Positions 3,208 to 33,915 of a DNA stretch of 64,000 bases are shown here, piece by piece; within the stretch, counting starts at the first letter, position 1; every line of letters begins with the position of its first letter. The notes beneath the pieces were generated by a model, which saw only the letters and a program-made list of their open reading frames with translations, was not told the DNA's origin and searched no databases. The stretch spans positions 62,001-126,000 of the IMG/VR virus record IMGVR_UViG_3300027771_001853. One strand, written 5' to 3'. A program made the translations under genes and the position numbers.

Positions 3208-4332
3208 TTATAAATAGTTCCACAAAAGGTCTTGGAACAAATCATTTACCTCATCGTCATCCCAAGGATAGTCATCTACAGCAGGACAAAGAGAATCCAG
3301 GTTAAATTCTTTTATCATTTCTAAAAAATTGTCAGGACTATCAATCTCATACGCATGTCTAACTATCATTGCTCTTGCTCTATCTGTTACGTCAAAATAT
3401 TTTACAGGGACTTCTACTTTTGTCCATTTATTTTTACCAGTTTCTTGATTCATTACATCCTTATAGGTGTTTGTCGTTCCTTGACCTATTGGTTTACCTA
3501 AAAAATCCTCAAATTCTTTATAGTATGAAGTATAGTATTGATTTTGTACAACTTCATTCCATGCACTACCATAGGCAGTCTTTATTTCGTTCTCCACATC
3601 TTCTAGTTCAGGTGTGTTACCTATAAGAACAGCCAAGTTATATCTATCACCACCTAAAAAACCATTCATCCTGTTAAGAGTTAAAAAAACCTTACCTTCT
3701 GGTAGTTGGTCCTCTTCCCTCCAACTATCAAATTCCTCCCTCCAAGCGGTTACTTCCTCATTTTGGAACTCACCACCAATATACCTTACTAGTTTTATGT
3801 AATTTTCTTCTGTTAGTAAATCTAATAACTCCTCTATGTTCATATCTGAATCATAAGGTTCCCAATCCAAATAACCATCACCAAATATTTGTTTTGCGAC
3901 TTCATTACAATCAATACTACTACCCCTATAACCCCCATCAAAAAATTCAGCTTCTTCACCAGGCATTAACTCTAAGATAATTCTATCATTCTTATCTTTA
4001 CCGATAAACCTCATGTCGTCCAAGTAAGGTTCAATCACATATTCATCCATCAAATCATTATCAACCGCACCATTGTTCCAAGCTCTAATTCCTCCTAATG
4101 CGTTAATGATATGTTCTAATACTCTTTCCTGTGGCCATTGGGAGGACATGTGGTCTAAGAAGTCTCGACCCTTCCCAAGTTTATCTAAGGCATTATACAA
4201 TTCATGTATATCACCACCAAATAGTTTTATAAGAGGCCAAATATCTTCTATCTCACTACTTTGGAATACCTGTTCTGACCAAGGCGTGGTTTTTTCCACT
4301 AATAAAGCTGATACCGTTTGGATAAGTTTCAT
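3208..4332 (-). CDS. highly acidic hypothetical protein with LLVE N-terminal leader
   Basis: 374 aa ORF, D/E-rich; begins MKLIQTVSALLVEK; TATTTAT at 4337-4343 upstream. Confidence 0.75.
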   Translation of the reverse strand: MKLIQTVSALLVEKTTPWSEQVFQSSEIEDIWPLIKLFGGDIHELYNALDKLGKGRDFLDHMSSQWPQERVLEHIINALGGIRAWNNGAVDNDLMDEYVIEPYLDDMRFIGKDKNDRIILELMPGEEAEFFDGGYRGSSIDCNEVAKQIFGDGYLDWEPYDSDMNIEELLDLLTEENYIKLVRYIGGEFQNEEVTAWREEFDSWREEDQLPEGKVFLTLNRMNGFLGGDRYNLAVLIGNTPELEDVENEIKTAYGSAWNEVVQNQYYTSYYKEFEDFLGKPIGQGTTNTYKDVMNQETGKNKWTKVEVPVKYFDVTDRARAMIVRHAYEIDSPDNFLEMIKEFNLDSLCPAVDDYPWDDDEVNDLFQDLLWNYL

Positions 4333-4347
4333 ATTAATAAATACAAC

Positions 4348-4374
4348 AAAAAAAAGTCTAAATTACTTAGACTT
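4348..4374 (-). terminator. putative intrinsic terminator
   Basis: Minus strand AAGTCTAA-gtaat-TTAGACTT stem-loop followed by a T-tract, overlapping the stop of 4363-4482. Confidence 0.55.
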
Positions 4375-4482
4375 CTTTTTGTTCTGTTCTTTTGCTATTT
4401 CTATTAGTTTTTCCCGGATTTGGGTTGTACGGTCTGGCATAGGTTTGTTAGTAGAAGATTTCTTCTTACACCCACACCCCAT
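4363..4482 (-). CDS. small basic peptide with MGCGC N-terminus (39 aa)
   Basis: Manual translation MGCGCKKKSSTNKPMPDRTTQIREKLIEIAKEQNKKKSK*; starts 1 nt after the stop of 4484-4708. Confidence 0.6.
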   Translation of the reverse strand: MGCGCKKKSSTNKPMPDRTTQIREKLIEIAKEQNKKKSK

Positions 4483-4483
4483 G

Positions 4484-4792: not shown

Positions 4793-4799
4793 TATTTAT
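4793..4799 (+). promoter_or_regulatory. TATTTAT putative late-promoter motif (representative copy)
   Basis: 15 nt upstream of ATG 4815. Same motif in sense orientation at 3210-3216, 4337-4343, 4747-4753, 8195-8205, 10587-10593, 12798-12804, 20712-20718, 23982-23988, 25399-25405, 32506-32512, 43685-43691. Confidence 0.6.
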
Positions 4800-4814
4800 T
4801 ACAAAAAGTAATTA

Positions 4815-6617
4815 ATGTTATTAACTGAAAATAGGGTCTCCAAAGTAAAAGAAATGTACAACATACCGTCGGAGGTATGGGAACCTATGGTTACCGGTAG
4901 TGCTGCTATTTCACCTAATCAAAAATATTTAGAGTGGATTGCTAAACAATGGGAGGGAGCTACATTATCACCAGAAGATTCTGGTACTCGTAATTATGTT
5001 GGTGGTACCCTTCCTGGTTTACTTACTACTGTAGAAGAATTTGATAGGGTAAGACCTAACCTTAAAAAGAAAGATTTGTATCAATATCGTGATAGACAAG
5101 AGGTAATCGATAGTCTAGAAGGTTATAAATTGGAGAAGATTAGGAATATAGAAACCCATGATGAGTCTGAGGTGGTGTACGAAAATAATAGATTCAAGGT
5201 AGTTGTCCCTAAGTCCCATACCGCATCATGTTATTATGGTGCTGGTACCAAATGGTGTACAGCTTCTAAAGGAAATCCAAATCATTTTACCAACTACGAT
5301 AAAGCGGGTAAATTGTTTTATATTTTGGATAAACAGGCACCAACATCCAGCCTTTACTATAAAGTTGCTTTAAATAAAACCTATAAAGGTGGTGATACCT
5401 GGTATGACGCAATAGATGATGTAATGACAGCATCTAATTTAGATGGGTATATTGATACGTTAAATAAATTCGAAATAATTAATAAGATTAAAGAATATTT
5501 TAAATTTACATATGATGATGAAATTTCAAAAATAAGTGATGAAGAAAAACAACGGGAATTAGAAAGGATAGCTAGAGAAGCTGAATGGGCACAAAGAAGG
5601 AGAGAGAGAGAACAACGTCTTGAAACTGTAGCGAACCAAAGAAGAGCTTCTGATGCCTGGAAACCTGGAGAGGGTGGGACTTTAGGTGAATTGGCTAATG
5701 CGTTAATGGAATGGTTAAAAGATAACGATAAGTGGGATACTGACAATACCGAAGCGATTGGCGATTTAGTTGGTGAAATTGAGTCCATGCGTAATGATAT
5801 GGAAAATGACCCTGATGTTATAGCTGACATTGATGGTGAAAGAGCACAGGATTATGGTCAAGACTTGGGGAATCTAGAGGATAGTCTTGAGTCACTTAGG
5901 AATGAAAAACATGACGTATACGACCTGAGACAAGACGAAAGTAGTCATTATGGTTTACCTATATTTGAATATAACGATGAGGAGTATTCTATAGGTGACG
6001 ATATTATGGCAAATGAAGCAGCTTGGGACCAAGTCGATAATCTATTAGATGATATTGGTTTTAATGGGTTTTCAGCTGGGATGATGGAATGGTATGTAGA
6101 TGGTGAGATGGTAGCTGATGATTTTGAAAGTATGTTTTACGATGATGTATCAGATTCACCTGAAGATTATTTAGATGTGGATGATGATAGAGAACTAACT
6201 GATACTGCTGTAGAACAACTAGAAGCTATGAGTGAACAAATTGGTGAATACCAAGTTGAGTTGGAGGATACAGACATTAGTGACGAAATAGATAGAGAAT
6301 ACCTAGTTGACCAAATAGAAGCATTAGAAGAGGCTAAAGTGGATTTAATGGATGATGAAGATAGTTACGAGTGGACAGAATACGCTAAGGAGGAATACGT
6401 GAAGAGAAGACTTGACGAGGTTAGAAATGACCCCGTAGAGTTCCTACAAGATTATGGTTACGGTACGGAAACTTATGAACGATATATAGATAGAGATAAA
6501 TTTATAGAGGGTGTTATAGATGCTGATGGTAGAGCTAATGGACTTTCTTCCTATGATGGGGAAGAAGGTGAGGTTTCCTATGGGGGTGACTGGTATTACA
6601 TTTATAGGTTAAATTAA
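4815..6617 (+). CDS. SCxYG-WCT (PcfJ-like) core protein with very acidic C-terminal half
   Basis: MLLTE leader; NQKYLEW, KKDLYQY, SCYYGAGTKWCTAS, GKLFYI; C-terminal ~300 aa strongly D/E-rich. Confidence 0.75.
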   Translation: MLLTENRVSKVKEMYNIPSEVWEPMVTGSAAISPNQKYLEWIAKQWEGATLSPEDSGTRNYVGGTLPGLLTTVEEFDRVRPNLKKKDLYQYRDRQEVIDSLEGYKLEKIRNIETHDESEVVYENNRFKVVVPKSHTASCYYGAGTKWCTASKGNPNHFTNYDKAGKLFYILDKQAPTSSLYYKVALNKTYKGGDTWYDAIDDVMTASNLDGYIDTLNKFEIINKIKEYFKFTYDDEISKISDEEKQRELERIAREAEWAQRRREREQRLETVANQRRASDAWKPGEGGTLGELANALMEWLKDNDKWDTDNTEAIGDLVGEIESMRNDMENDPDVIADIDGERAQDYGQDLGNLEDSLESLRNEKHDVYDLRQDESSHYGLPIFEYNDEEYSIGDDIMANEAAWDQVDNLLDDIGFNGFSAGMMEWYVDGEMVADDFESMFYDDVSDSPEDYLDVDDDRELTDTAVEQLEAMSEQIGEYQVELEDTDISDEIDREYLVDQIEALEEAKVDLMDDEDSYEWTEYAKEEYVKRRLDEVRNDPVEFLQDYGYGTETYERYIDRDKFIEGVIDADGRANGLSSYDGEEGEVSYGGDWYYIYRLN

Positions 6618-8185
6618 TGAAAAGATTGAAAAACATATTATTAGAAGGAAGAATAGAAGACGCACAACGACACTTTGAAGACTCTGTTGGGTCTTGGCCT
6701 GTTGCAGAACCAGGTAACCCAGCTGGGGTTGGGGCACAGACTAATTTAGATGGTGTATTAAAACATTTTACACAGAACGACCCTTCAGGTAACAACAAGT
6801 ATCTTATGTGGATGGTTAAAATGTATCTTAATCCAGAAGAAAGAGGAACATCACCTAATGACATATCATCCGTAGTACAAAGATTCCATAAGAATGTAGG
6901 TAGGTTAAGTACAGCACTTATAATTAATATGGATATATTTGACCCTAGTAGTAGGATAGCTACTTCACCAAAGAATCTAGATTCTTATGGGGATATATCA
7001 CAAGTAGAAAGGGTTATGGATGAAGTAGACTCAATACAAACAAAAAAAGAAAAAGAAACCCAAGCTAAATCAGGTGTGGATAAATTATATGAAGATGAGA
7101 GATGGTTGTTGGTTAAACCAAATACCTACGAGGGTTCTTGTTATTATGGTTCATCAACCAAATGGTGTACTTCTAGTAAAACCACAACGACACACTTTGA
7201 GGATTACTCTAAGAGAGGAAATTTATATTATATTATAGATAAGAGTCATCAATTAGGTGATTATTATAAAATTGCGTTATTTAAAGAATGGGATGGTAAT
7301 GAAGAATGGTACGATAGAGCAGATGATAGTTTAAATCAAGGTACAATAAATGCTATTCGTTCTATGGTACCACAAGACTTAATTAAAGCACTGGATAATT
7401 CTTACAGGAACACCAAACCACCTGAACAAGAAACAATGTTCTACACTTTAGATGAATTCCAAAATAAACTAACTGAATATATTAAATCAAAACCATCACT
7501 ACAAACTATTACTACTGAGAGTGGTATTTGGAAATGGGAATCTGACATCATGAATCAGACGTGGACTTGGAGAAACTCAAAAGATAATGAAGAGTTGAGT
7601 TTACAAGCCACTCCTTTTTGGGACGGCCTGGATGGAATACCTTTCGACTCTTATTCGGATGATGACGAATTCGGTAACTTCCATGATACACTGTTAGCTC
7701 CAGAAGTGTGGGAATATAATGAATATATAGGAAAGAATGAGTTTTTAAGTAAAACTAATACCGATATGGGGGTTAAATTATTTCTTACTTTTATGTACCT
7801 ACCTAAACTTAGGGAGGTTTTAACTGATGATTTCTTTAAACAGCAGGTTAATCGTGATTACACAATCTGGACCTCAAGTAACCCTGTTTCCACTTACACA
7901 TTTAAATGGCCACCTAAAAGTGGTTCGATGACACAACTTTTTACAGACTATATTAAACAAAATCCTGGGTCTAGTCCTAATGATTTTTATGAGGAAGTAT
8001 ACGGTAAACCTAGACCTAGAGGACATAACAATATGTTCTTTTCCTCCATTAAAGATTCGGGTATTGTAAAAATGGAAAGAGAGGGAAGACGATTTGTTTA
8101 CAGTTTAGGACCTAACTACAAAATGTGGACGAGGGGTAATTTACTTAGGTCAGGTAGGAGGAACATGAATGTAGGTTACTATTGA
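6617..8185 (+). CDS. SCxYG-WCT (PcfJ-like) core protein with C-terminal winged-helix-like domain
   Basis: MKRLKNILLE leader; DPSGNNKYLMW, SCYYGSSTKWCTSS, GNLYYI; C-term YIKQNPG...FFSSIKDSGIVKMEREGRRFVYSL (ArsR-like wing). Confidence 0.75.
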   Translation: MKRLKNILLEGRIEDAQRHFEDSVGSWPVAEPGNPAGVGAQTNLDGVLKHFTQNDPSGNNKYLMWMVKMYLNPEERGTSPNDISSVVQRFHKNVGRLSTALIINMDIFDPSSRIATSPKNLDSYGDISQVERVMDEVDSIQTKKEKETQAKSGVDKLYEDERWLLVKPNTYEGSCYYGSSTKWCTSSKTTTTHFEDYSKRGNLYYIIDKSHQLGDYYKIALFKEWDGNEEWYDRADDSLNQGTINAIRSMVPQDLIKALDNSYRNTKPPEQETMFYTLDEFQNKLTEYIKSKPSLQTITTESGIWKWESDIMNQTWTWRNSKDNEELSLQATPFWDGLDGIPFDSYSDDDEFGNFHDTLLAPEVWEYNEYIGKNEFLSKTNTDMGVKLFLTFMYLPKLREVLTDDFFKQQVNRDYTIWTSSNPVSTYTFKWPPKSGSMTQLFTDYIKQNPGSSPNDFYEEVYGKPRPRGHNNMFFSSIKDSGIVKMEREGRRFVYSLGPNYKMWTRGNLLRSGRRNMNVGYY

Positions 8186-8215: not shown

Positions 8216-10141
8216 ATGAGTTTTACTGGATGTAGACCGGGTGAAAATTGTTCGGATTACGGTTATATTTTTAATGATGTATTACCCCCAAATATTGTTG
8301 ATGGGTTAAACGAATTATATGGGTGTGGCATCAACCCTTACTCTTTTATTGATTGCAGTATTTTAACTGGTTGTACTAGTGTGTTAAGTGGTTTAACTGG
8401 CCCTTATATAACTGGTGCTACCTACAACCCTATTAGTGGTTGTCTTACGTTTTTTAGACAAAGTGGTGCCACATTTAGTACATGTGGTTTTTTAACGGGT
8501 GCAACTTCTACAAGTAGTAGTTACTGGTCTGCTGGAACTAGAGGTATTACGTATACCGGAGGGTCTAGTACCTATGTCGGTGTTGGTACTGAGGACCCTA
8601 ATAAAACTTTAACTATTAAGGGTAGTGTGTCCGCTACTACCACATTGGATGTGGATGGAAACACAACCTTATCAACACAATTAAACATTAGTGGTAATAC
8701 AGTTACTTCAGGTAACATATCTTTAACACAAGATAGTTATTTGTATTTTGGGTATGATGTGAATAACCAAACATACATTAGAGAAGATGGGAGTAATTTA
8801 GTGATTGATGCTAACGATGATATACTCTTAAGACCCGATGATGATTTAAAAATAGCTTATGGTAGTACACAATATGCCTCATTTGATGGTTCAAAATCTT
8901 CTTTAGTTATTGGTACTACGGTTGTACCAAACTCTAGATTAACTGTAGATGGTACTCAAAGTGGTTCAGTTAGTTCTATTGCTGAGGCCAATGACCCAAC
9001 GAGTTCCGTAGCACTGGCAAATTTCTTTAATACAAGGTCCGGTACAGTGAGTACCGCTAACCTATTTATAGGTGAGAAAAGAAGTTCTGGGACAGGTGAT
9101 TTCTTTATATACCCACAAGGTACAAACGCAGAAATTTTAATTAATAGTGATTTAGTTCTTGGAGCTTACAAGGCTGGGACCCTATACTCTAGTGAACTTT
9201 TAAGATTAAAAGGTAGTACTGCTAGGGTAGGTATTAAGAATGTTTCACCTGCTTTTGATTTGGATGTTGGTGGTTCCCAAAATGCAACTACAATATATAG
9301 TGCTGGTACCGAATTAAGTTTATTATTTAGAATGAGTAATAGGGGGCATTGGTCAGCTAACACAGCTGGACTAATATACACTGGAGGCACATCAACTACA
9401 GTAGGTATTGGTACTTCGGTACCTAACAAAGAATTAACAGTTATAGGTTCTGTTTCAGCCACGACTGATATGTATGTGGGTAATGATTTAAAGGTTAGTG
9501 GTAATTTAGGTATTGGGGTGACCCCTACTAATGCGTTACACATATCTACAGCTGATAATGTAGTAGCGAAAATTATTAGTACGGACGCTACAGCAACAAT
9601 TGAACTTAGTGATAGTAACACCACCAATGCCGCAGCTTTTAAAAGAGTAACAGATAATTTACAATTCGTTCCAAACGGAGGTAATGTAGGTATAGGTACA
9701 AGTCCAGTAACCAAATTAGATGTACATCACGACCCAACTGATATAAGTGATAATACTGGTGGTGGTGACGTAATTACTTTTGGTATTGAGTCGAACGCAA
9801 ATAGTTTATCTGCTGGAACACTAATGTGGTTACATACTGACGGTTACTGGTATAACACAGATGCTGACAATGTTGCGAGTGGTGCTACTAATTTAATAGC
9901 TATAGCTTTAGGGACCGCAGTAAGTGACGGAATGTTAATTAATGGTTATTACGACTACAGTTCAAATCTCCAGGGGACCTTCGCTAAAGGTATGGCATGT
10001 TATGTGTCAGAGAATGCTGGATTTGTGGATTTTACTGCACCTTCTGGTACTTACGATTATGTAAGAATCTTAGGTTATGGGACAGATAAAGTTAATATAA
10101 TATACTTTAACCCTGATAAGACTTGGGTTGAGTTGTCTTAG
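8216..10141 (+). CDS. fibre protein (tail or head fibre) with VGIGT repeats
   Basis: Repeated VGVGT/VGIGT..P motifs, G/S/T-rich beta composition, internal duplication WSA..G..YTGG.ST.VG.GT..PNK.LT..GSVSATT. Confidence 0.7.
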   Translation: MSFTGCRPGENCSDYGYIFNDVLPPNIVDGLNELYGCGINPYSFIDCSILTGCTSVLSGLTGPYITGATYNPISGCLTFFRQSGATFSTCGFLTGATSTSSSYWSAGTRGITYTGGSSTYVGVGTEDPNKTLTIKGSVSATTTLDVDGNTTLSTQLNISGNTVTSGNISLTQDSYLYFGYDVNNQTYIREDGSNLVIDANDDILLRPDDDLKIAYGSTQYASFDGSKSSLVIGTTVVPNSRLTVDGTQSGSVSSIAEANDPTSSVALANFFNTRSGTVSTANLFIGEKRSSGTGDFFIYPQGTNAEILINSDLVLGAYKAGTLYSSELLRLKGSTARVGIKNVSPAFDLDVGGSQNATTIYSAGTELSLLFRMSNRGHWSANTAGLIYTGGTSTTVGIGTSVPNKELTVIGSVSATTDMYVGNDLKVSGNLGIGVTPTNALHISTADNVVAKIISTDATATIELSDSNTTNAAAFKRVTDNLQFVPNGGNVGIGTSPVTKLDVHHDPTDISDNTGGGDVITFGIESNANSLSAGTLMWLHTDGYWYNTDADNVASGATNLIAIALGTAVSDGMLINGYYDYSSNLQGTFAKGMACYVSENAGFVDFTAPSGTYDYVRILGYGTDKVNIIYFNPDKTWVELS

Positions 10142-10527: not shown

Positions 10528-10609
10528 TATTTATAAATATTAATAAGTTCATACAAATATAAAAACTTTTTTCTTTAATGTCATAATATTTATAATTAAA
10601 GATATTAAT

Positions 10610-11506
10610 ATGAGTAACCATAAAATTATACTTACCCCGGAACAAATCAAATACGTCTTAAAAGAAAGTAAAGGCAAGAATAACAATAAGGACGAAAAAC
10701 TATTGACTGAAGTTGATTGGAATTTTGTCGCTGATATAGTTGGTATTGTAGACCCTACAGGTGTTGTGGATTTAGCAAATGGTATATCTTACGCAACTCA
10801 AGGAAGATGGTTATTTGCTTTTTTAAGTTGGGTAGCTATAGTCCCTTACGTGGGTGATGCGGTAGCTAAACCTTTTTCTTTCATGTTAAGGGGTAGTAAA
10901 GGTGCTATTAAAAGTGTTGATGCCGCAATCAAAACTGGTAAAGCTGCTAATGTGTCAGCAGCACTAGGTAAAGCTGGTGTTAAAGAAGGTGCGGAAGCTT
11001 TCGTTAAGGGAGCGACAAAACCTATGGAAGGGATATTAACAAAACTAAAAAAAGTCCCTTTGTTTGGTACGGTTGCAAAAGACGCTGGGAAATGGTGGAA
11101 AATTTTCTCTACAGGGGCTGTTATGAAATCCTCACTTAAAACGACTAAATTAGGTACGGTCACTGGTTTAGGTATAAGAAGAGGATTTGCTAAAGCAGCT
11201 ACTAAACTTACTAGTGGTAATAAAAATGTAGTGTCAGCCTCAATAGCTTTAATGACCCCAAGTGCTTTAAGGACTTTAGGTTTTAGAACTAAAATGTATG
11301 GTAGATTAGCTGGTGTTGGTACCGGTGGTGAAAAGGCTGGTGTAATGGGGGATTTTCTAGAAACCTCTGAAGGTGAACAATGGTGGGATGGTTTAAGTGA
11401 TGACCAACAAAACCATTTAACTAGTCAAGAAACTGTAGAAGAAGGAGGTGAAGGTAAAAGTAATGATGAACTTATGAAGATTTTATCTAAACTAGTTTCA
11501 TCTTAA
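10610..11506 (+). CDS. pre-toxin TG (PT-TG)-like domain protein with N-terminal leader
   Basis: ADIVGIVDPTGVVDLANGISYATQGRWLFAFLSWVAIVPYVGDAVAK resembles pre-toxin TG hairpins; leader MSNHKIILTPEQIKYVLKES...LLTE. Confidence 0.6.
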   Translation: MSNHKIILTPEQIKYVLKESKGKNNNKDEKLLTEVDWNFVADIVGIVDPTGVVDLANGISYATQGRWLFAFLSWVAIVPYVGDAVAKPFSFMLRGSKGAIKSVDAAIKTGKAANVSAALGKAGVKEGAEAFVKGATKPMEGILTKLKKVPLFGTVAKDAGKWWKIFSTGAVMKSSLKTTKLGTVTGLGIRRGFAKAATKLTSGNKNVVSASIALMTPSALRTLGFRTKMYGRLAGVGTGGEKAGVMGDFLETSEGEQWWDGLSDDQQNHLTSQETVEEGGEGKSNDELMKILSKLVSS

Positions 11507-12783
11507 CTTATTAAAAAGTTATTATCTTCTTCACCCCAATCTATAACTTCCTGAGGTACTACCATATTACTATTACCCCTAATATTAATCACTTCTAGGT
11601 TTGGTAGGGTTAGAACCGATAGTGGTAGACTTTTTAAGGATGGGTTATTAGGTACAGATATAAACTCTAGGTTAGTTAGGTCCCCTAAATTTTCAGGTAA
11701 TTCTGACAATGAGTTTTCTATATGTAAAACCTTTAAATTCTTAAAACTTAGTATTTTTTGTGATAGTGGGGACGCCGACTTACTCGTTTTACCACCATCC
11801 ATATCCAATCTAACTAATGTTTTTGGTAGCTTATCTAAGAAATCTTCAAATCCGTATATATTAATATACCTTTGTATTGCACCCTGTCCCTGAGATATTT
11901 CCACAGTATCTTTAAATTCGTCAGTAAGAAACTTAGCAAACTTTTCTTTAAAGAAAGCTTTTAATTCTGGGTATTCAGTAAAAAACTCACTTAAATCTAC
12001 GTTCCTATCTTCTGCATTCATAAATGAATTACTTTCGAAATGGAATTGGTGACTTCTACTTTCGTTAGGACTTTTATTTATATCCTCTTTACGTAAAACC
12101 ATATATAGTGGACCTTGTTTTGCGTAATGGTCATAATAGTTACTACCCTTTGAAGCTGTACACCATCTAGATTGTCCCCCACCATAATGACAGGAGGCTT
12201 CTTTAGTTTTAGGTACCATTATAATCCAATTAGAATCCTCCCATACAACATCCACGTCGTCTCTAACCCTCTCTGCTTTAGTTGTGGTAAGTTCTTCCTT
12301 ACTTACGTTATAGTCTTTTACTTGGTCGTATAACCCCTCAATACTAGGGATTCTATTTATATCTTTTTCACCTTTATACTTACCTGTCTTCTTTAAGTAA
12401 TCGAATTTCATTAAATCCTCTGTTACCTTATATAAATCTTCTATGAATAGACCCTGGGACTGGTCGAGTTCGTCTTTCCAAGATTGGGTACCATATTTGA
12501 ATTCCGCGTCTGCTTTTTGTTGTAATCCCATCCATTGTTTAATTAACCATTGGGTGTATGCACCAACTTTAGTGACATCTCTACTATCCCTATCACCTTC
12601 AAAATCACCCCTAGTAGTGGGGTCGGCTTGCATTAAGTCCGTTAATATATCTAATTCTATTTTAGGTTTTATAACCTTTCCCGAAGCTTTCGTTTTACTT
12701 TTCGCAAATTTATCTACTAAAACTTCGTAACGACTCTGTTCTAGTACTAATTTTTTAAGTATGTCAGTAATACCCATATTCAT
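11503..12783 (-). CDS. SCxYG-WCT (PcfJ-like) core protein with C-terminal leucine-rich repeats
   Basis: ILKKLVLE leader; ADPTT..GAYTQW, EKDINR, SCHYGGGQSRWCTAS, GPLYMV, QFHFES; LRRs LKVLHIENSLSELPENLGDLTNLEFISVPNNPSLKSLP..LPNLEVINIRGN. Confidence 0.8.
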   Translation of the reverse strand: MNMGITDILKKLVLEQSRYEVLVDKFAKSKTKASGKVIKPKIELDILTDLMQADPTTRGDFEGDRDSRDVTKVGAYTQWLIKQWMGLQQKADAEFKYGTQSWKDELDQSQGLFIEDLYKVTEDLMKFDYLKKTGKYKGEKDINRIPSIEGLYDQVKDYNVSKEELTTTKAERVRDDVDVVWEDSNWIIMVPKTKEASCHYGGGQSRWCTASKGSNYYDHYAKQGPLYMVLRKEDINKSPNESRSHQFHFESNSFMNAEDRNVDLSEFFTEYPELKAFFKEKFAKFLTDEFKDTVEISQGQGAIQRYINIYGFEDFLDKLPKTLVRLDMDGGKTSKSASPLSQKILSFKNLKVLHIENSLSELPENLGDLTNLEFISVPNNPSLKSLPLSVLTLPNLEVINIRGNSNMVVPQEVIDWGEEDNNFLIS

Positions 12784-12837
12784 AGTATTGTTTATTAATA
12801 AATATTGTCTAATTGTGAATTTACCTACCTGTGTGAA

Positions 12838-13122: not shown

Positions 13123-13180
13123 TTTAATTTTATTTTTTGATTAGACTTCTTTTAATAGTACAAATATAAATATAAATAAG

Positions 13181-13381
13181 TTATTTACCAACTTTCTTCA
13201 GTATTTTTCTTTCCATGTCTATTATAGTTTTTTCTAGATTTAAAATCTGTTTTTCGACAGTAAGTATTTGTTCTCTTTGTTCTCTAGATGCTTTTGCCTC
13301 CATAATTAACCAAGCGAATGCCACGACCTCTATAATAAATAATAATATTAATAGTGTTGTTTGTATCATATTACCTACCAA
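13181..13381 (-). CDS. small membrane protein with coiled-coil tail
   Basis: Hydrophobic N-terminal helix (TLLILLFIIEVVAFAWLI) then heptad repeats; real start may be the ATG of MIQT. Confidence 0.65.
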   Translation of the reverse strand: MVGNMIQTTLLILLFIIEVVAFAWLIMEAKASREQREQILTVEKQILNLEKTIIDMERKILKKVGK

Positions 13382-19222: not shown

Positions 19223-20119
19223 TTAACTTTCGTATGGTGGTTTATTAGACCCCTTTATAGTAAATACTTTTCCGATTGGTAAATTCATTGGTGCTACCCC
19301 TACTATCCCAGCTTTAGGGTCAGTTACTGGTGATTTATAAAGACCTCGTCTTATTAATTCCTCACCTAACTCATCTTTTGTATAAACTTTAGTCCTTTCA
19401 CGTCCCTTTTCTTTCATTTTATCGACAAAACTAGAACCTTTTAATTCTTTTAATACCATTTTCTTTATAGTATTGGTTTTGATGGATGTTTTTTTAGCGA
19501 CTTCTTCTATAGCTTTCTTTACATTTTCATACTCAAAGAACTCCAAAGCGTTTATATCACCCTGATTACAGTATGGGAATTTTTTACATTTATCCTTAAC
19601 TTTAACATACTTAGCTCCTTCTCCACCATATTTTGGGAATTTAGGATTGAGGGCATTCCAGTTACCACCTTTTTGACCGTCTTTAGCCCACACTTGTGGT
19701 CCAGAGTATTGTCCAGAAGATGAACTAGTGGTTGCTTCATCTACCTCTAATGGTGTTATCTCTTCACCCATGTAATCTTTTACCTCCACATTTTTATGCC
19801 CTACTGTCTTTCCTCCTGGTCCTCCCCATTTTGGGAAGTTCTTGTCGGATACAGCTTTCCAATTTTTTTTATCTTTAGCCCACACTTGTGGTCCAGAGTA
19901 TTGTCCAGAAGATGAAGCTGTAGTGGCCTCATCCATTTCTTCTTCTTGTATTTCGTCTTCATCGGATTCTTTTTGTATCTTATCCATTTCTGACTTTACT
20001 GTACCATAAGCACTACCACTACTTTTTAAAGCATTACTAACCCCTAATTTTACCTCTGTGTCATATGTACGAGATATGTTAGGCATACTTGGTAAGTTTG
20101 ATTCTGTTATTGTTCCCAT
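19223..20119 (-). CDS. repeat-containing hypothetical protein, candidate processed head protein
   Basis: MGTITE leader; two DEATT(A/S)SSSGQYSGPQVWAKD units; KCKKFPYCNQG motif. Confidence 0.75.
   Translation of the reverse strand: MGTITESNLPSMPNISRTYDTEVKLGVSNALKSSGSAYGTVKSEMDKIQKESDEDEIQEEEMDEATTASSSGQYSGPQVWAKDKKNWKAVSDKNFPKWGGPGGKTVGHKNVEVKDYMGEEITPLEVDEATTSSSSGQYSGPQVWAKDGQKGGNWNALNPKFPKYGGEGAKYVKVKDKCKKFPYCNQGDINALEFFEYENVKKAIEEVAKKTSIKTNTIKKMVLKELKGSSFVDKMKEKGRERTKVYTKDELGEELIRRGLYKSPVTDPKAGIVGVAPMNLPIGKVFTIKGSNKPPYES
19680..19916. repeat. perfect 45-bp direct repeat (19680-19724 and 19872-19916)
   Basis: tctttagcccacacttgtggtccagagtattgtccagaagatgaa occurs twice, 192 bp apart and in frame. 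Confidence 0.9.
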
Positions 20120-23992: not shown

Positions 23993-24787
23993 TTAATCCA
24001 TATAATCAAGAAGAGTTTCACTTTCGTTTCTTAATTTCCTTAACGCTTTCTCTTTTATTTGTCTTACCCTTTCTTTAGTAAGACTAAAATCTAAACCAAT
24101 ATCCGATAATGTTTTAGGTACACCCATTAAACCAAAATAATCCACAACTATTATTTTCTCTCTTTCATCCAAAACATTTAGTATACGTTTTAACTCTGAC
24201 TTTAGACTTTCTTTGGTTTGGAATACATCTTCTGGGTTATCCGCTTCTTTGTTTTCTATTAAATCTAATATAGTGTCACCATCTTCATTTATAGGTCTAT
24301 CATATTTAAAAGTTGTGGGTAAACTTTGTAATTTAGCGTCCAACTCCTTCCCTTCCTGTTTAAGTACTTTTTTAGCCTTTTGTAAGTCTTGTACAACATT
24401 AGCTGGTAACCTAATTGTTCTAGAATGTTCATTTAAACATTGTAATATAGATTGTTTTACCCACCATACAGCGTATGATATAAACCTATACCCCCTAGAC
24501 CAATCAAAATTCTTTATAGCCTTTAACAAACCAAAATTCCCTTCAGCTATTAAATCAGCTAAAGGTATTCCCTGGTTTTGATATTCTTTTGCTACGGTAA
24601 TAACGAATCTTAAGTTCCCTATTATGATTTCGTTCTCAACAGCAGCTTTTTCTAGGTCTGTAGGGTCGTTTTGTATAATTTTAGATATTTCTTTTTCTCT
24701 AGCTGGTGTCATCACTTTTAACTTACGTAAGTCTTTTAGGTATTCAGCTATCTCTTCTTGGTTGATGTGGTAGTTACTTTTTGCCAT
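23993..24787 (-). CDS. RNA polymerase sigma-70 family factor (RpoD/SigA-like, no region 1.1)
   Basis: NLRFVITVAKEYQNQG..LADLIAEGNFGL.KA, FISYAVWWVKQSI, RTIRLP, LTKERVRQIKEKALRKLR. Confidence 0.95.
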   Translation of the reverse strand: MAKSNYHINQEEIAEYLKDLRKLKVMTPAREKEISKIIQNDPTDLEKAAVENEIIIGNLRFVITVAKEYQNQGIPLADLIAEGNFGLLKAIKNFDWSRGYRFISYAVWWVKQSILQCLNEHSRTIRLPANVVQDLQKAKKVLKQEGKELDAKLQSLPTTFKYDRPINEDGDTILDLIENKEADNPEDVFQTKESLKSELKRILNVLDEREKIIVVDYFGLMGVPKTLSDIGLDFSLTKERVRQIKEKALRKLRNESETLLDYMD

Positions 24788-25361: not shown

Positions 25362-25386
25362 TTATTTTTTATATTTAAATTTAATA

Positions 25387-25417
25387 CAAAAGTACTAATA
25401 TTTATTTAATGTACAAA
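25387..25417 (-). promoter_or_regulatory. Bacteroidota-type promoter driving the DUF6576-sigma factor operon
   Basis: TTTG-N19-TACTTTTG on the minus strand, 25 nt upstream of ATG 25361. Confidence 0.7.
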
Positions 25418-25465
25418 TATTGTACCATTAATAATTTTTACAAATATACAGAAATTTTGTCATAT

Positions 25466-25801
25466 ATGAAAAAAAATATACTAGTAACTGAGGAACAATT
25501 AGATAGACTTTTAGATAAAAGACTAAAAGAAGATAAACCTGTCGACGATATACCAGGATTCGAAGGAACCATGGAAAAATTAGATGGGTTATATAACTCC
25601 ACTAATAGAAGATTTAGAGTTTCTATCTATTACGATATTAATGTACCTGATTCTGGTGATTTAGAAGTTGACCGTGAAATAGCCACAAAAATAGCAGATT
25701 CTGATAGAAAGCGAATGAGGAATATGGAAACTTACGTTGGTGGTGCGGCTTGGCGTCCTTCTGGTGGTTTTCCACCTCAAGAAGAATTAGACCGTCTATA
25801 G
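25466..25801 (+). CDS. small protein with N-terminal leader (MKKNILVTEEQLDRLL)
   Basis: ORF track 25409-25801; ATG 25466 gives a leader like those of 10610 and 32536. Confidence 0.7.
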   Translation: MKKNILVTEEQLDRLLDKRLKEDKPVDDIPGFEGTMEKLDGLYNSTNRRFRVSIYYDINVPDSGDLEVDREIATKIADSDRKRMRNMETYVGGAAWRPSGGFPPQEELDRL

Positions 25802-25811
25802 TAGGCCCCTA

Positions 25812-26849: not shown

Positions 26850-26863
26850 TTTTTTACTTTTTT

Positions 26864-30366: not shown

Positions 30367-30379
30367 ATTTTTTTATTGT

Positions 30380-30970: not shown

Positions 30971-31715
30971 TGTCTTCTATGTCTTTAATTTTAAAATTTA
31001 AATATGGTCTATGGTTCTCTACATCCTCAAATTTATACTCGTTTTTATTAATACTATAAACCCCGAAACCGTGGTTTTTTAGACTTTCACCAAAATTTTG
31101 TTGTATTAGTGAACCAACCATATATAATTTACCTGTCGGTATTTCCACGATTTGTCTTTTATGTATATCACCAGCTAACACAACATCACACCCCGTAAAA
31201 TGTTCTGGTGATGTTCCTTCATCAAACATATACCCCATATCGGTAGATAAACCTTCTATCGTGCCGTGGTATAAACCTATATTATGTAGGTCTTTCTCTT
31301 TTGTGATTTCTGGACGTTCGTTATCTTCTTTTAAGGAGTACACACACCAGTTTACATTATCATCCAAATAAACCCCCTTGTCTGTAAAATAAACAATATT
31401 ATCGTTATTTATATTTTCAATGATTGGTGTTAGGGTATCTAACCTATCTAAATTATTTTCTAAAAAATCGTGATTACCTATTAACACTATTGTCTTTGCT
31501 ATCTTGGCACACTCTTTAAGTACCCAACTTACAATATCTATTAATTCAGGTGTAACGTGATTTTTAGAATGTACTAAATCACCAGTAAAAACTATCCTAT
31601 CTGGTTTTAACTCTGACCACCTATCAAAACATTCACTTAGAATGTCCCTATAAAGGTCATGGTCTTTATATAATTTGATGTGTAAATCAGAAAAATGAAC
31701 TATCTTATCTATCAT
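30936..31715 (-). CDS. SbcD/Mre11 (T4 gp47-like) metallophosphoesterase nuclease
   Basis: HFSDLH, TGDLVH, GNHD, YHG, AGDIHKRQ, GSLIQQNFGE. Confidence 0.9.
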   Translation of the reverse strand: MIDKIVHFSDLHIKLYKDHDLYRDILSECFDRWSELKPDRIVFTGDLVHSKNHVTPELIDIVSWVLKECAKIAKTIVLIGNHDFLENNLDRLDTLTPIIENINNDNIVYFTDKGVYLDDNVNWCVYSLKEDNERPEITKEKDLHNIGLYHGTIEGLSTDMGYMFDEGTSPEHFTGCDVVLAGDIHKRQIVEIPTGKLYMVGSLIQQNFGESLKNHGFGVYSINKNEYKFEDVENHRPYLNFKIKDIEDIEKERERLTNK

Positions 31716-31719
31716 TTCT

Positions 31720-32499
31720 TTAGTTGTTTTTTGTAACTTCTATAATTTCTTTAATTTCCTTCTCAAAATTATAACATTTAAAAACGTGATAGTCATCATT
31801 TTCTTCATTAAGCCACACAATATAAGAATCACCCAACTCTAGGTTAGTATTTTTTGTAATAAGGTACTTGTAAAGAGATAATTGTAGGGAGTACGTGTTT
31901 AGTTCACATATGTCTAAATGGGAAATAGGTTTCTTAAATCTTTGCCACTTATTTTTTTTCTTTATTTCTTTATTTGTCTTCCAATCCCATATCTCCAACT
32001 TACCTGATTTTTCATTAAAAAACAATTGGTCAACCATTCCAGCTATACCCAATTCTAGGTCCCCAACCACTAATTCAGCACGTACAGGTATAAGCTTACC
32101 GTAGGAGTCTTTGTAAAATTTATCAAATAAACCTTTCAGTTTCTCCACTTTTACTCTACAATCCTCAACTAACTCATCTTTTTTTAATATGGATTTAATC
32201 CTTTCTTCTGGGAAATCAAAAATCTTATTAAAAAGATAACTTTCCACAAACGCATGGAGAGCCGACCCTTTTTCACAAGCAAAATCTTTCTTAAGGTCCC
32301 ATTCTGCTTTTATCTCATCAACAGTAATTCCTCTTTCTTTAGCTTTTCTATTTGCCCAATATTCCACATCAAATGGCTGCTTAAATTTCCCTATCAATGA
32401 AGTAGCGGAAGTTAACTTTTCTTTCCCAATATAGTATGTGTGTTCTTTTTCGTAGAATTTTATATTATTGAACACAGATAATTCTTTTATTATATGCAT
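31720..32499 (-). CDS. PD-(D/E)xK exonuclease (Cas4/AddB-like phage nuclease)
   Basis: HTYY, SATSLI, GSALH, E..V, AGMVDQL, IWDWKTNK, YSLQLSLY. Confidence 0.85.
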   Translation of the reverse strand: MHIIKELSVFNNIKFYEKEHTYYIGKEKLTSATSLIGKFKQPFDVEYWANRKAKERGITVDEIKAEWDLKKDFACEKGSALHAFVESYLFNKIFDFPEERIKSILKKDELVEDCRVKVEKLKGLFDKFYKDSYGKLIPVRAELVVGDLELGIAGMVDQLFFNEKSGKLEIWDWKTNKEIKKKNKWQRFKKPISHLDICELNTYSLQLSLYKYLITKNTNLELGDSYIVWLNEENDDYHVFKCYNFEKEIKEIIEVTKNN

Positions 32500-32535
32500 A
32501 ACATCTATTTATATGTAGAAATATAACACTATTAA

Positions 32536-33915
32536 ATGAAACGACAAGTTATTCTTAAAGAGAGTCAGTATAATACTATTAAAAGGCGTTTAATAGAAAG
32601 TTCCAAAAGGGGCAAGGCTGGCGTAGCGGAAAATCATTTCTTAATTAACCTACAAAACCGTTTAAAAGACATTAACTCTGAAGGTATTGCTCCTGTCATT
32701 ATGAATGGTGGGAAACCTGTGGGGGGTGAGTTGGGTTGGGAGGATACTTTATCTTGGTATCAAGAAAACCCTTCTTGGGCAAAGTCACACAACAAACAAC
32801 TAGATAGACTACTAGAATTACTCCCAAATAAACCTAACATCCGAAGTCTAGTAAAGGGTAATTCTAAATACCCTTTAAATGTTTTAGCTAGAGAATTGTT
32901 AACCAATAAAAAAGGTAGTGGAACTAATATAGCAAAATGGAACCCCGCTGATGTCTGGATAGAGTATGATGATTTTAATTTTGAAGACATTAGTTTTATG
33001 GATGATATAGAGTCTTTAAATACCTATTTGGATGAAGCTTTAATTGAGGGTAAATGGGTGTTGGGTCTGTCTTTGAAGAAGGGTCAGGGGTTCTATGAGT
33101 TTGTTAATACCTCTAATAGAGCTAGGAAACCTAAAAAGGGTAGTGATGAATACGATTCAGCAAAGACCTATTTGGATAAAAAGTATGAGGATAAGTACGG
33201 CGAGGATTTGGTCTCTGAAGTATTGGAGGATGGGTACGTTATTACTCGTGTGGACGTTGGTGGAGCAAATAAAAAGACAATACAGATATGGTATTTAATT
33301 TTAATTGTAAGGACTGAACAAAATGGTGACGCTTCTTATAGTATAGTGCCTTCTAGAGTGGACATTAGGAGTTTTACTACGGACCCAGGGGGTAAGATAT
33401 ATGTTGAAGCTGGTGGAGGAAAAGGTCATATGAGTGGAAAAGCAAGGATTGAGGTTATAATCCAAGAAGCCATGTCTAATAAGAATATAGATAATGTAAG
33501 AGAGGACATCAAATACCTTTATAACCTGGTTAACGAATTATCTACCGTAGACGTAAACAATGAAGGGGACATCGAAAAACTATTAGGTGACTACAACGAC
33601 ACTTTGGATGATTTAATAAAAATTAGTAATACGATTAAAAAACCATTTTTAAAAGGTATTTTTAATTCTGAAATAAAAAAATTAAGTCCTATAAGGGGTG
33701 GTGATATCTACATGGACCAACGGGTACCTTCTGTTAGAGCTAGAGGTCCATGGGGTCGTATCAGTTCTAGACTTCAAAGTATGTTGTTTTTAGATGATAT
33801 GTTTGAAGTTACTGGTGAGGAGGTTAGAAAACATCAAAATTCTTTGTTGAAGACTGTGGTTCAATACGCTAGGGGTCAATCGGATTGGTCCGCTCCCCAT
33901 ATGGTTATAAAATAA
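32536..33915 (+). CDS. restriction-endonuclease-like (PD-(D/E)xK variant) protein with N-terminal leader
   Basis: AE..., KWNPADVW...LGLSLKK; leader MKRQVILKESQYNTIKRRLIES; TATTTAT at 32506-32512. Confidence 0.55.
   Translation: MKRQVILKESQYNTIKRRLIESSKRGKAGVAENHFLINLQNRLKDINSEGIAPVIMNGGKPVGGELGWEDTLSWYQENPSWAKSHNKQLDRLLELLPNKPNIRSLVKGNSKYPLNVLARELLTNKKGSGTNIAKWNPADVWIEYDDFNFEDISFMDDIESLNTYLDEALIEGKWVLGLSLKKGQGFYEFVNTSNRARKPKKGSDEYDSAKTYLDKKYEDKYGEDLVSEVLEDGYVITRVDVGGANKKTIQIWYLILIVRTEQNGDASYSIVPSRVDIRSFTTDPGGKIYVEAGGGKGHMSGKARIEVIIQEAMSNKNIDNVREDIKYLYNLVNELSTVDVNNEGDIEKLLGDYNDTLDDLIKISNTIKKPFLKGIFNSEIKKLSPIRGGDIYMDQRVPSVRARGPWGRISSRLQSMLFLDDMFEVTGEEVRKHQNSLLKTVVQYARGQSDWSAPHMVIK

What the first reader, a model, noticed from the sequence alone, without database searches (positions are those of the whole stretch)
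3208..33915. Dispersed leader + late-motif + payload cassettes: candidate virion-packaged effector system
Seen: about nine genes scattered among early/replication genes start with a short basic-hydrophobic leader ending in [LIV]-x-E: MKLIQTVSALLVE (3208), MLLTE (4815), MKRLKNILLE (6617), MSNHKIILTPEQIKYVLKE (10610), MGITDILKKLVLE (11503), MKKEELQLLE (18448), MGTITE (19223), MKKNILVTEEQLDRLLDKRLKE (25466), MKRQVILKESQ..RLIE (32536). Six have TATTTAT within about 60 nt upstream. Five of the seven credible plus-strand genes in this minus-strand window belong to the set. Known: T4 internal head proteins carry a short N-terminal capsid-targeting sequence removed by the gp21 prohead protease after [LI]-x-E, and are injected with the DNA. 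Inference: these are modular cassettes that load diverse payloads (WCT-core proteins, pre-toxin, nuclease, acidic mimics) into the head for delivery at infection.
Basis: partly seen in the sequence, partly recalled or inferred. Interest (0 to 1): 0.85.

Follow-up and report, generated by a model that had tools for sequence, protein, structure and literature searches.

The report
Modular N-terminal leaders in jumbo phage
An uncultured 298-kb marine phage puts the same kinds of short N-terminal peptide, always ending in hydrophobic-x-Glu and usually preceded by a TATTTAT promoter-like box, on many unrelated proteins; this is best read as a T4-style tag for loading proteins into the virus head, but packaging and cleavage are untested.

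Summary
The quoted peptides are all present, but four of the coordinates are the 3' ends of minus-strand genes. The nine genes are also a mixed set. Refined models show a real signal. Two related leader types occur almost only at N-termini: A (K-I-x-L-T-E-x-Q-L..h-h-x-E) and C (M-K-L-I-x-x-L-x-x-L-h-x-E). At 10 bits or more they give 18 and 21 N-terminal hits, 0 internal hits, and about 0.1 hits in shuffles. They sit on 20 cargo families that are unrelated beyond residue 30. A third type (B) is the conserved N-terminus of a paralogous family (4815, 6617, 11503). A homologue of that family in cultured jumbo phage PA5oct is a mass-spectrometry-detected virion protein. Leader genes carry TATTTAT upstream far more often than other genes (8/11 vs 12/92). 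The same box precedes baseplate and fibre genes. The phage has a T4-type tail and neck core. A T4-like capsid-targeting propeptide system is the best explanation (about 0.5). No prohead protease or capsid gene was found in about 140 kb examined, and the proposed payload functions are unsupported.

The parts
3208..4332 (-). 374-aa protein of unknown function with a class C leader (MKLIQTVSALLVE, nt 4294-4332)
   Evidence: Class C HMM 24.4 bits. The leader is conserved in orthologs that are 29-37% identical. No Pfam or PHROG hit.
4338..4383 (-). TATTTAT box (4338-4344) 5 nt before the ATG of the 3208 gene, directly after a terminator-like hairpin (4345-4383)
4794..4800 (+). TATTTAT box 14 nt upstream of gene 4815
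4815..6617 (+). Family B paralog (600 aa) with a truncated leader, MLLTE|NRVSKVKEMY
   Evidence: blastp 6e-25 to 6617; phrog_28193/17056; orthologs carry longer versions such as MSLLHLIIEGRVED
6617..8185 (+). Family B paralog (522 aa): leader MKRLKNILLE|GRIEDA, DPSGNNKYLMWM and TKWCTAS motifs, C-terminal winged-helix-like domain
   Evidence: 294 homologues. E10, G11 and D15 are invariant. In the AF2 model residues 1-8 have pLDDT <50 and a helix starts at 12. Foldseek winged-helix hits have prob 0.9-0.99 but E about 0.3.
8216..10141 (+). 641-aa gene in the same plus-strand island with TATTTAT but no leader; its C-terminus resembles ORFs with fibre-like N-termini
10588..10594 (+). TATTTAT box 15 nt upstream of gene 10610
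10610..11506 (+). 298-aa protein with a class A leader (MSNHKIILTPEQIKYVLKE|SKGK)
   Evidence: Class A HMM 22.9 bits. Its cargo family also occurs in freshwater phage contigs (fam3).
11503..12783 (-). Family B paralog (426 aa) with a C-terminal leucine-rich repeat; leader MNMGITDILKKLVLE|QS; TATTTAT at 12799-12805
   Evidence: LRR_13 3e-07; blastp 1.2e-17 to PA5oct structural protein EST35_0205
18448..19212 (-). 254-aa protein; doubtful member. Its N-terminal helix is only loosely leader-like and there is no TATTTAT.
   Evidence: Homologues have varied N-termini, some of the form MRISELTQIIESV..KES. It scored below the HMM thresholds.
19223..20119 (-). 298-aa protein; doubtful member. MGTITE is not conserved, although a distant homologue (L030_8825) carries a full class A leader.
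25466..25801 (+). 111-aa protein with a class A leader (MKKNILVTEEQLDRLLDKRLKE|DKP); TATTTAT at 25400-25406
   Evidence: Class A HMM 18.8 bits from this start. The ortholog L016_3351 begins with the leader.
32507..33915 (+). TATTTAT (32507-32513) plus a 459-aa protein with a class A leader (MKRQVILKESQYNTIKRRLIE|SSKRGKAG); the cargo has conserved KWNPADVW, GLSLK and SDWSAPH motifs
   Evidence: 23.4 bits. Close orthologs keep the leader; distant ones carry MIKSFYQFITE|ATL-type leaders. AF2 residues 1-25 have pLDDT <50. No fold match.
23993..24787 (-). Phage sigma-70-family factor; a candidate reader of the TATTTAT box (inference only)
   Evidence: Sigma70_r2 4.7e-15 and r4 1.1e-13
41178..43692 (-). 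829-aa fibre/baseplate-module gene preceded by TATTTAT (43686-43692). This shows the box also serves virion genes.
651..1334 (-). ClpP homologue; the only protease in the window. Relevant to the degron rival, and not a gp21-type protease.
   Evidence: CLP_protease 1.7e-57

Best explanation
The window comes from a 297.6-kb uncultured marine jumbo phage with a T4-type tail and neck core. A subset of its genes are self-contained cassettes. Each has a TATTTAT promoter-like box 1-23 nt before the ATG, giving short or absent 5' UTRs. Each encodes a 5-22-residue amphipathic N-terminal leader that ends in hydrophobic-x-Glu, followed by an unrelated cargo protein.

By analogy with T4 capsid-targeting sequences, the leader is proposed to dock the cargo onto the prohead scaffolding core. 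A Glu-specific gp21-type prohead protease would then cut after the Glu. The cargo would stay in the head and could be ejected with the DNA.

Shown here:
- the leaders exist, are N-terminus-specific and are selected at peptide level;
- they are shared by unrelated cargos;
- they co-occur with the box;
- one carrier family has a virion-detected homologue.

Inferred only: head location, cleavage, ejection and effector roles.
For: Leader specificity.
- Class A HMM: 18 N-terminal hits at 10 bits or more in 58,380 residues, against 0 in 284,442 internal residues.
- Class C HMM: 21 against 0.
- Composition-preserving shuffles of the N-termini give a mean of 0.1 and 0.05 hits.

Modularity.
- 49 non-redundant carriers fall into 20 cargo families with no similarity after residue 30.
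- All 49 have hydrophobic-x-E ending at residues 8-26, against 735/1497 of other ORFs.
- In the DHH-like 474-aa family the leader is 7, 14, 20 or 22 aa long. The junction h-x-E|[SGT]-G-[IL]-[RQ] is fixed and the mature part stays 58-72% identical.
- Lysozyme orthologs that are 74% identical differ by MRIIITENQL vs MKLI---NQL.

Peptide-level selection.
- Between different cargo families, codon identity at identical leader residues is as expected from codon usage: 215 vs 211 of 437, and 43 vs 34 of 82.

Structure.
- AF2 gives the leaders pLDDT <50 while the rest of the protein folds.

Regulation.
- TATTTAT is orientation-specific upstream of genes (20 sense vs 6 antisense).
- It is enriched at leader genes (8/11 vs 12/92, p = 6e-5).
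- It also precedes the gp25-like baseplate gene, a 1144-aa baseplate gene and fibre-like genes.

T4-type context.
- GPW_gp25, T4_baseplate, gp19, sheath and gp13 homologues are present.
- T4's own processed N-termini look alike: gp24 MAKINELLRE, gp21 MNEPQLLIE, gp22 MLKEQLIAE. The L/I-x-E rule and the 10-aa CTS are documented in PMC9026906, PMC3012670 and PMC12373910.

Virion evidence by homology.
- PA5oct EST35_0205 is annotated 'structural protein, ESI-MS/MS'. It matches the family B HMM at 1e-21 and window 11503 at 1.2e-17.
- In contig L005 two family B genes sit next to terminase and a T4 gp20-like portal (4.8e-34).

Which genes carry leaders.
- Recognisable replication and metabolic enzymes and the large tail proteins lack class A, B or C leaders.
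- A lysozyme, a DHH-like phosphoesterase and a HAD-like protein carry them.
Against: - No Peptidase_S77/gp21-like protease, gp23-like capsid protein or portal was found in about 140 kb. That covers contig 41-164 kb plus about 18 kb further from a second assembly. Methods were Pfam, PHROGs and phmmer with T4 gp20-24.
- There are no virion proteomics for this lineage. No cultured relative exists beyond family B.
- Residues after the Glu are varied (S, G, D, Q, E, K, T, N).
- In family B, and partly in the DHH family, conservation continues beyond the Glu (G-R-h-E-D-A...Y-P). That suggests a structural element, not only a cleavage site.
- Some leaders (MLLTE, MKKIIKE, MGTITE) are shorter than T4's 10-residue targeting sequence.
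- TATTTAT also precedes a DnaB-like helicase gene, so calling it 'late' is an inference.
- The PA5oct annotation shows virion association, not head location or processing.
Confidence: 0.5

Rival explanations
1. The leaders are uncleaved docking or oligomerisation helices. They would tether diverse proteins to some common partner other than the prohead core, such as a tail or baseplate hub, a membrane complex or a replication compartment.
For: - The leaders are amphipathic helices, and AF2 places them as free extensions.
- Family B conservation runs through the Glu into the next helix.
- The PA5oct homologue is only known to be 'structural', with no location.
- One leader gene (HAD-like, L123:8694-9383) lies between the sheath and tube genes.
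Against: - The invariant terminal hydrophobic-x-Glu (49/49) and the fixed junction despite 7-22-aa length variation are what a protease site predicts. They are not needed for a docking helix.
- The large tail proteins themselves lack leaders.
Confidence: 0.2
2. The similarity reflects a nucleic-acid element. Promoter plus first codons would form a regulatory, translation-initiation or recombination cassette for near-leaderless late mRNAs, and the peptide would be a by-product.
For: - TATTTAT lies only 1-10 nt from the ATG in many leader genes, and GTATTTATATAAT|ATG is conserved in DHH orthologs.
- Within that ortholog group the leader has fewer synonymous changes per codon than the mature part: 213 over 19 codons vs 1401 over 40.
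- T4-type phages are known to shuffle genes through conserved promoter cassettes (PMC2839356, PMC4122927, listed).
Against: - Across unrelated cargo families, codon identity at identical leader residues equals the codon-usage expectation (215 vs 211; 43 vs 34). What is shared is the peptide, not the DNA.
- Leaders keep an amphipathic pattern and a terminal Glu while their sequences vary.
Confidence: 0.13
3. The leaders are N-terminal degrons or adaptor tags that deliver proteins to the phage-encoded ClpP (with host ClpX/ClpA) for timed turnover.
For: - A full-length ClpP is encoded at 651-1334 (1.7e-57), with DnaJ nearby.
- From general knowledge, Met-basic-hydrophobic N-termini resemble some ClpX N-terminal recognition motifs.
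Against: - Carriers include conserved enzymes (lysozyme, DHH-like) and a family with a virion-detected homologue.
- ClpXP recognition does not explain the invariant terminal Glu.
- The leader genes share a promoter box with virion genes.
Confidence: 0.07
4. The pattern is chance in an AT-rich genome whose proteins are rich in K, L, I and E.
For:
- 19223 and 18448 have non-conserved N-termini.
Against: - The refined leaders exceed internal positions and shuffles by more than 100-fold.
- They recur in 20 unrelated families.
Confidence: 0.03

Closest known systems
T4 capsid-targeting sequences (CTS) of the internal proteins IPI-III and Alt, removed by prohead protease gp21
   Same: - A short N-terminal peptide is the only feature shared by otherwise unrelated proteins.
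- It ends in L/I-x-E.
- The genes have their own promoters and sit in variable regions.
- The phage has a T4-type structural core.
- The cargo plausibly acts at entry (a lysozyme, a phosphoesterase).
   Different: - There is no sequence homology to the T4 CTS.
- At least three leader types of 5-22 aa are used instead of one conserved 10-mer.
- The cassettes are dispersed over more than 100 kb and on both strands, not in one or two ip loci.
- Carriers are much larger and more numerous (100-600 aa).
- Protease, packaging and cleavage are not demonstrated.
Propeptide-processed head and ejection proteins of giant phages phiKZ, 201phi2-1 and SPN3US
   Same: These are jumbo phages in which many head proteins carry N-terminal propeptides cut after Glu by a diverged gp21 homologue.
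   Different: - Their motif is S/A-x-E with few other determinants, and the propeptides are long and not a shared recognisable peptide.
- Here the P3 residue is hydrophobic, as in T4, and the leaders are recognisable families.
PA5oct virion protein EST35_0205 (QCG76086.1), Rak2-like jumbo phages
   Same: It is a homologue of the N-terminal domain of window genes 4815, 6617 and 11503. It was detected in virions by ESI-MS/MS, lies next to a probable large terminase gene (my reading of the EST35_0204 N-terminus; GenBank calls it hypothetical), and begins MKLFEVFTLYE.
   Different: Identity is 24-27% over about 170-220 residues. Its location in the virion and its N-terminal processing are unknown.
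PeSL promoter/stem-loop mobile regulatory cassettes of T4-type phages
   Same: Conserved promoter-containing 5' modules flank variable genes. A hairpin followed by the box is seen upstream of the 3208 gene.
   Different: PeSLs are early promoters acting at DNA level. Here the cross-family similarity is at peptide level and the box is shared with virion genes.
Encapsulin cargo-loading peptides
   Same: A short terminal peptide targets diverse cargo into an HK97-fold shell.
   Different: They are usually C-terminal, uncleaved and cellular. There is no sequence relationship.

Membership tests
T4-type CTS / internal-protein system | A short N-terminal peptide shared by proteins that are otherwise unrelated | tested here: met
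   Class A and C HMMs are N-terminus-specific. There are 20 cargo families with no similarity beyond residue 30.
T4-type CTS / internal-protein system | The leader ends in the gp21 cleavage consensus L/I-x-E | tested here: met
   49/49 carriers have hydrophobic-x-E ending at residues 8-26, against 49% of other ORFs. The junction is fixed in the DHH family. This is sequence evidence only.
T4-type CTS / internal-protein system | The genome encodes a gp21-type (Peptidase_S77) prohead protease with scaffold and gp23-type capsid | tested here: inconclusive
   None was found in about 140 of 298 kb. T4-type gp13, gp18, gp19, gp25 and baseplate homologues are present.
T4-type CTS / internal-protein system | The proteins are present inside the mature head with the leader removed, and are ejected on infection | not testable with these tools
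   The only evidence is indirect: the family B homologue is MS-detected in PA5oct virions.
T4-type CTS / internal-protein system | Sequence homology of the leader to the T4 CTS | not tested
   The ip genes were not fetched. The leaders resemble T4 gp24, gp21 and gp22 N-termini in style only.
T4-type CTS / internal-protein system | Late transcription together with head genes | tested here: inconclusive
   The TATTTAT box is shared with the gp25-like gene, baseplate genes and fibre-like genes. It also precedes a DnaB-like gene, and there are no expression data.
phiKZ/SPN3US-type propeptides | Cleavage motif S/A/G-x-E | tested here: not met
   The P3 residue is L, I, V, M, F or C in all 49 carriers.
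Family B (phrog_28193/17056; DPSGNNKYL...WCTAS domain) | A conserved N-terminal domain of about 200 aa with variable C-termini | tested here: met
   The C-termini are a winged-helix-like domain (6617), an LRR (11503) and an unknown domain (4815).
PcfJ-like (PF14284) | Profile similarity of the family B WC[TI][AS] region to PcfJ | tested here: not met
   No Pfam hit for the family B proteins. hhalign of family B against the PcfJ-domain protein of the same contig gives prob 0.2.

The most novel reading that the evidence does not exclude
Uncultured marine and freshwater jumbo phages with a T4-type core use a generalised promoter-plus-leader cassette with several interchangeable leader types. The cassette would load at least 20 unrelated cargo families into the capsid for injection. 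Cargo includes a lysozyme, a DHH-like phosphoesterase, a HAD-like enzyme and winged-helix- and LRR-bearing proteins. This would be a far larger and more dispersed injected-protein arsenal than the T4 ip loci, and it could be read directly from sequence.
Probability: 0.35. Interest if true: 0.75.

Novelty: new variant of a known kind. Interest (0 to 1): 0.62.

Why it matters
If the leaders are capsid-targeting propeptides, a simple sequence signature would identify the injected protein repertoire of uncultured giant phages directly from metagenomes. The signature is the TATTTAT box plus an amphipathic leader ending in hydrophobic-x-Glu. Injected proteins are prime candidates for counter-defence and host take-over functions, and most have no annotation at present. 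The signature would also extend the T4 capsid-targeting principle to a distant lineage that is probably Bacteroidota-infecting. It would supply natural tags for loading foreign proteins into large capsids.

Tried and rejected
- Megablast of 37 kb of the window against GenBank phages gave no match.
- tblastn of 6617 and 3208 gave none. 32536 and the DHH-like protein hit only unannotated 630-735-kb 'uncultured phage' records.
- Pfam and PHROGs on the nine candidates gave only an LRR and unknown-function PHROGs.
- PDB sequence searches for 6617 and its profile gave nothing meaningful.
- AF2 plus Foldseek for 6617 gave only a weak winged-helix C-terminus.
- AF2 plus Foldseek for 32536 gave no match, so the 'nuclease' label is neither supported nor excluded.
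- A family B to PcfJ link was rejected.
- First regex searches for the leader were circular, finding only the seeds. They were replaced by HMMs with internal and shuffle controls.
- 'Leader swapping by recombination' was softened. The lysozyme case aligns as a 3-residue indel, so classes A and C are probably variants of one leader family.
- The hunt for head genes walked the contig left to 41 kb and right to about 182 kb. It found bS21, AMG-like genes, baseplate, sheath, tube, neck gp13, DNA polymerase and fibre-like genes, but no capsid, portal or S77 protease.
- An S1-type serine protease (L134:2799-4721) was found. Its cysteine- and threonine-rich N-terminal half and its fibre-like neighbours point to a fibre- or surface-associated enzyme.
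- The PA5oct supplementary proteomics tables are not held.
- Two exact-product look-ups failed on start-codon differences.

Full report
**Source and context**

The window is bases 62,001-126,000 of IMG/VR contig IMGVR_UViG_3300027771_001853. This is a 297,623-bp marine viral contig. It has no near relative among GenBank phages.

Recognisable genes in the window are:
- ClpP, SAM synthetase, an endolysin-like protein, a DruA-like protein and DnaJ;
- an amidase, a sigma-70-family factor, an epimerase and a PLP enzyme;
- SbcC/SbcD-like proteins, an exonuclease, primase and a RuvC-like resolvase.

From 35 kb onward there is a run of very large ORFs with no family hits.

Walking along the contig showed a T4-type structural core. 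It includes gp25 and baseplate proteins, tail tube gp19, an 1135-aa sheath and neck gp13. Just left of the window lie bS21, glutamine synthetase and thioredoxin/glutaredoxin genes. The 35-64 kb part of the window therefore belongs to a baseplate/fibre module.

**Checking the observation**

All nine peptides exist as quoted. TATTTAT lies within 60 nt upstream of six of the nine, and five of seven credible plus-strand genes are in the set.

The criterion itself has no discriminating power. [LIV]-x-E occurs in the first 22-25 residues of 23 of 61 gene calls. Internal windows of the same proteins predict 19.7-21.9. Primase, the sigma factor, an exonuclease and the DruA-like protein all score.

The nine genes are also not one kind of thing:
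- 4815, 6617 and 11503 are paralogs sharing an N-terminal domain of about 200 residues (phrog_28193/17056).
- 18448 and 19223 have N-termini that are not conserved among their homologues.

**What is really there**

Comparison with orthologs and with about 1.5 Mb of related viral contigs brought out three recurrent N-terminal peptides.

Class A reads roughly M-K-K-I-I-K-L-T-E-[SEK]-[QDE]-L-x-x-I-[IV]-x-x-[VIL]-[ILK]-x-E. In the window it occurs on 10610, 25466 and 32536.

Class C reads M-K-L-I-[NHQ]-x-L-x-x-L-[IV]-x-E. In the window it occurs on 3208.

Small HMMs were built from five seeds for each class.
- Class A: 18 N-terminal matches at 10 bits or more in 58,380 N-terminal residues, and none in 284,442 internal residues.
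- Class C: 21 N-terminal matches and none internal.
- Shuffling each N-terminus, which keeps its composition, gives means of 0.1 (A) and 0.05 (C).

The 49 non-redundant carriers fall into 20 cargo families with no BLAST similarity after residue 30. All 49 have hydrophobic-x-Glu ending between residues 8 and 26, against 49% of other ORFs.

Carriers on the same contig, just outside the window, include:
- a T4-lysozyme-family protein (MGLLHTLSLLVEE|TTP; Pfam 2.2e-11);
- a highly conserved 474-aa DHH-like protein (MELVNTLSQILLKE|SGIRN; DHH 4e-4, below the Pfam cut-off);
- two small proteins with class A leaders;
- a HAD-like protein between the sheath and tube genes.

Class B is the N-terminus of the paralog family, h-L-L-E|G-R-[VIL]-E-D-A. 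It is invariant at E10, G11 and D15 across 26 homologues.

**Modularity**

In the DHH-like family the mature protein stays 58-72% identical. The leader, however, is 7 aa (MKKIIKE), 14 aa (class C), 20 aa or 22 aa (class A). It always abuts the same junction, h-x-E|[SGT]-G-[IL]-[RQ].

Lysozyme orthologs that are 74% identical differ at the N-terminus by MRIIITENQL versus MKLI---NQL. Classes A and C are therefore best seen as variants of one leader family.

Distant homologues of 32536 carry yet another leader, M..[FY]..F[IL]TE|ATL.

AF2 models of 6617 and 32536 give the leaders pLDDT below 50 while the body folds.

**Peptide or DNA?**

Within one ortholog group the first ten leader codons are unusually conserved at nucleotide level. 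The leader as a whole shows more non-synonymous than synonymous change: 331 vs 213, against 179 vs 1401 in the next 40 codons.

Between different cargo families the picture is clear. Codon identity at identical leader residues equals the codon-usage expectation: 215 vs 211 of 437 for class A, and 43 vs 34 of 82 for class C. What unrelated genes share is the peptide, not a stretch of DNA.

**The TATTTAT box**

In 93.6 kb of the contig there are 58 sites. Twenty of 103 genes have one in sense orientation within 40 nt upstream, against 6 with the reverse complement.

With leaders defined independently of the box, 8 of 11 leader genes have it against 12 of 92 other genes (Fisher one-sided p = 6e-5).

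The box usually reads [AG]TATTTAT and ends 1-23 nt before the ATG, which implies short or absent 5' UTRs. GTATTTATATAAT|ATG is conserved across DHH orthologs.

The box also precedes the gp25-like gene, a 1144-aa baseplate gene, the 829-aa gene at 41178-43667 and several fibre-like genes. That fits a late, virion-gene promoter. However, it also precedes a DnaB-like gene, and many structural genes inside operons lack it.

Canonical sigma-70 promoter matches are not enriched (40 vs 43.5 expected). The phage's own sigma factor (23993-24787) is a candidate reader of the box; this is inference.

**Link to virions**

Family B has a homologue in the cultured jumbo phage PA5oct. EST35_0205 matches the family HMM at 1e-21 and window 11503 by blastp at 1.2e-17. 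Its GenBank record labels it 'structural protein, ESI-MS/MS', and it lies among other MS-detected proteins.

In a 6.7-kb marine contig, two family B genes sit beside a terminase and a T4 gp20-like portal.

T4's own processed N-termini, read from AF158101, look much like these leaders: gp24 MAKINELLRE|S, gp21 MNEPQLLIE|T, gp22 MLKEQLIAE|A.

Three features of T4 biology are established:
- the L/I-x-E rule;
- the 10-residue capsid-targeting sequence;
- the fact that the internal proteins share nothing but that leader.

These are documented in PMC9026906, PMC3012670 and PMC12373910.

**Interpretation**

The best reading (about 0.5) is a T4-like capsid-targeting/propeptide system in a distant, uncultured lineage. 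It would use several leader variants and dispersed, self-promoted cassettes.

The host is probably Bacteroidota. This is inferred from SprB and Por_Secre_tail domains and from bS21.

What is missing:
- No S77 protease, capsid or portal gene was found in about 140 kb.
- There is no proteomic evidence.
- In family B the conservation runs past the Glu.
- Some leaders are only 5-7 residues long.

Rivals are an uncleaved docking helix (0.2), a nucleic-acid-level 5' cassette (0.13), a ClpP degron (0.07) and chance (0.03, realistic only for 18448 and 19223).

6617 ends in a winged-helix-like domain (weak). 11503 ends in an LRR. 32536 has conserved D...S-L-K-type motifs but no fold match.

**Novelty**

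The principle is known from T4, phiKZ and SPN3US. New here would be the leader sequences, their multiplicity and dispersal, the tight coupling to a promoter box, and the breadth of cargo. I rate it a new variant of a known kind, with interest of about 0.6.

Noticed in passing
window 13371-14546 (-): A phage-encoded homologue of the Druantia defence protein DruA (PF14236, E = 1.4e-23). It is 77-89% identical in related phage contigs L002 and L014.
   Followed up: partly
window 651-2497, 14860-15840, 23993-27754; L032/L035 left of the window: A dense set of host-like genes: ClpP, SAM synthetase, DnaJ, a sigma-70-family factor, an epimerase and a PLP-dependent (cysteine-synthase-like) enzyme. Just upstream are ribosomal protein bS21, glutamine synthetase, thioredoxin, glutaredoxin and a phrog_850 'RNA-binding protein'.
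   Followed up: partly
window 47552-55771 (-): A 2739-aa ORF inside the baseplate/fibre module with no Pfam or PHROG hit. Neighbouring ORFs at 37105, 38838 and 41178 share a short N-terminal motif (blastp 8e-4 between 37105 and 41178).
   Followed up: no
window 4345-4383 (-) and 13127-13180: A terminator-like hairpin abuts the TATTTAT box of the 3208 gene. The string AGAAGTCTAA recurs upstream of gene 12838. This may be a composite terminator-promoter unit like the PeSL cassettes of T4-type phages.
   Followed up: no
L035:10001-11425 (contig about 51.1-52.5 kb): A 474-aa DHH-like protein (FHQDTDG motif) found in more than 500 IMG/VR contigs at 57-91% identity. It always follows a lysozyme gene, and in this contig it lies about 1.7 kb from bS21. 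It is a candidate injected phosphoesterase.
   Followed up: partly
L123:6014-7204 (contig about 156.6-157.8 kb): A very acidic 396-aa protein next to the sheath gene, with TATTTAT upstream. It has several hydrophobic-x-E sites and an internal class-A-like stretch, NIVVTESQFERLMEQ. It could be a scaffold or core-like protein.
   Followed up: no
L134:2799-4721: A 640-aa protein with a chymotrypsin-fold serine-protease signature (TNNHV...DAALIEL...GDSGAA) after a Cys- and Thr-rich N-terminal half. It lies among fibre-like genes (phrog_20754 'protease', 9.5e-13).
   Followed up: partly
window 8216-10141 (+): This is the one large gene of the plus-strand island without a leader. It shares its C-terminal 130 residues with an ORF (L013_3781) whose N-terminus looks fibre-like, so it may be an adhesin.
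   Followed up: no
L006 (IMGVR_UViG_3300022916_000007) and MF360958.1 Salicola phage SCTP-2: Family B is expanded into tandem arrays in other phages. L006 has at least five copies with small class A leader genes between them. SCTP-2 has six matching places.
   Followed up: no
window 36611-37108 (-): A 165-aa ORF in the tail module starts MIQDVIRTLITE, which resembles a class C leader but scored below the 8-bit threshold.
   Followed up: no
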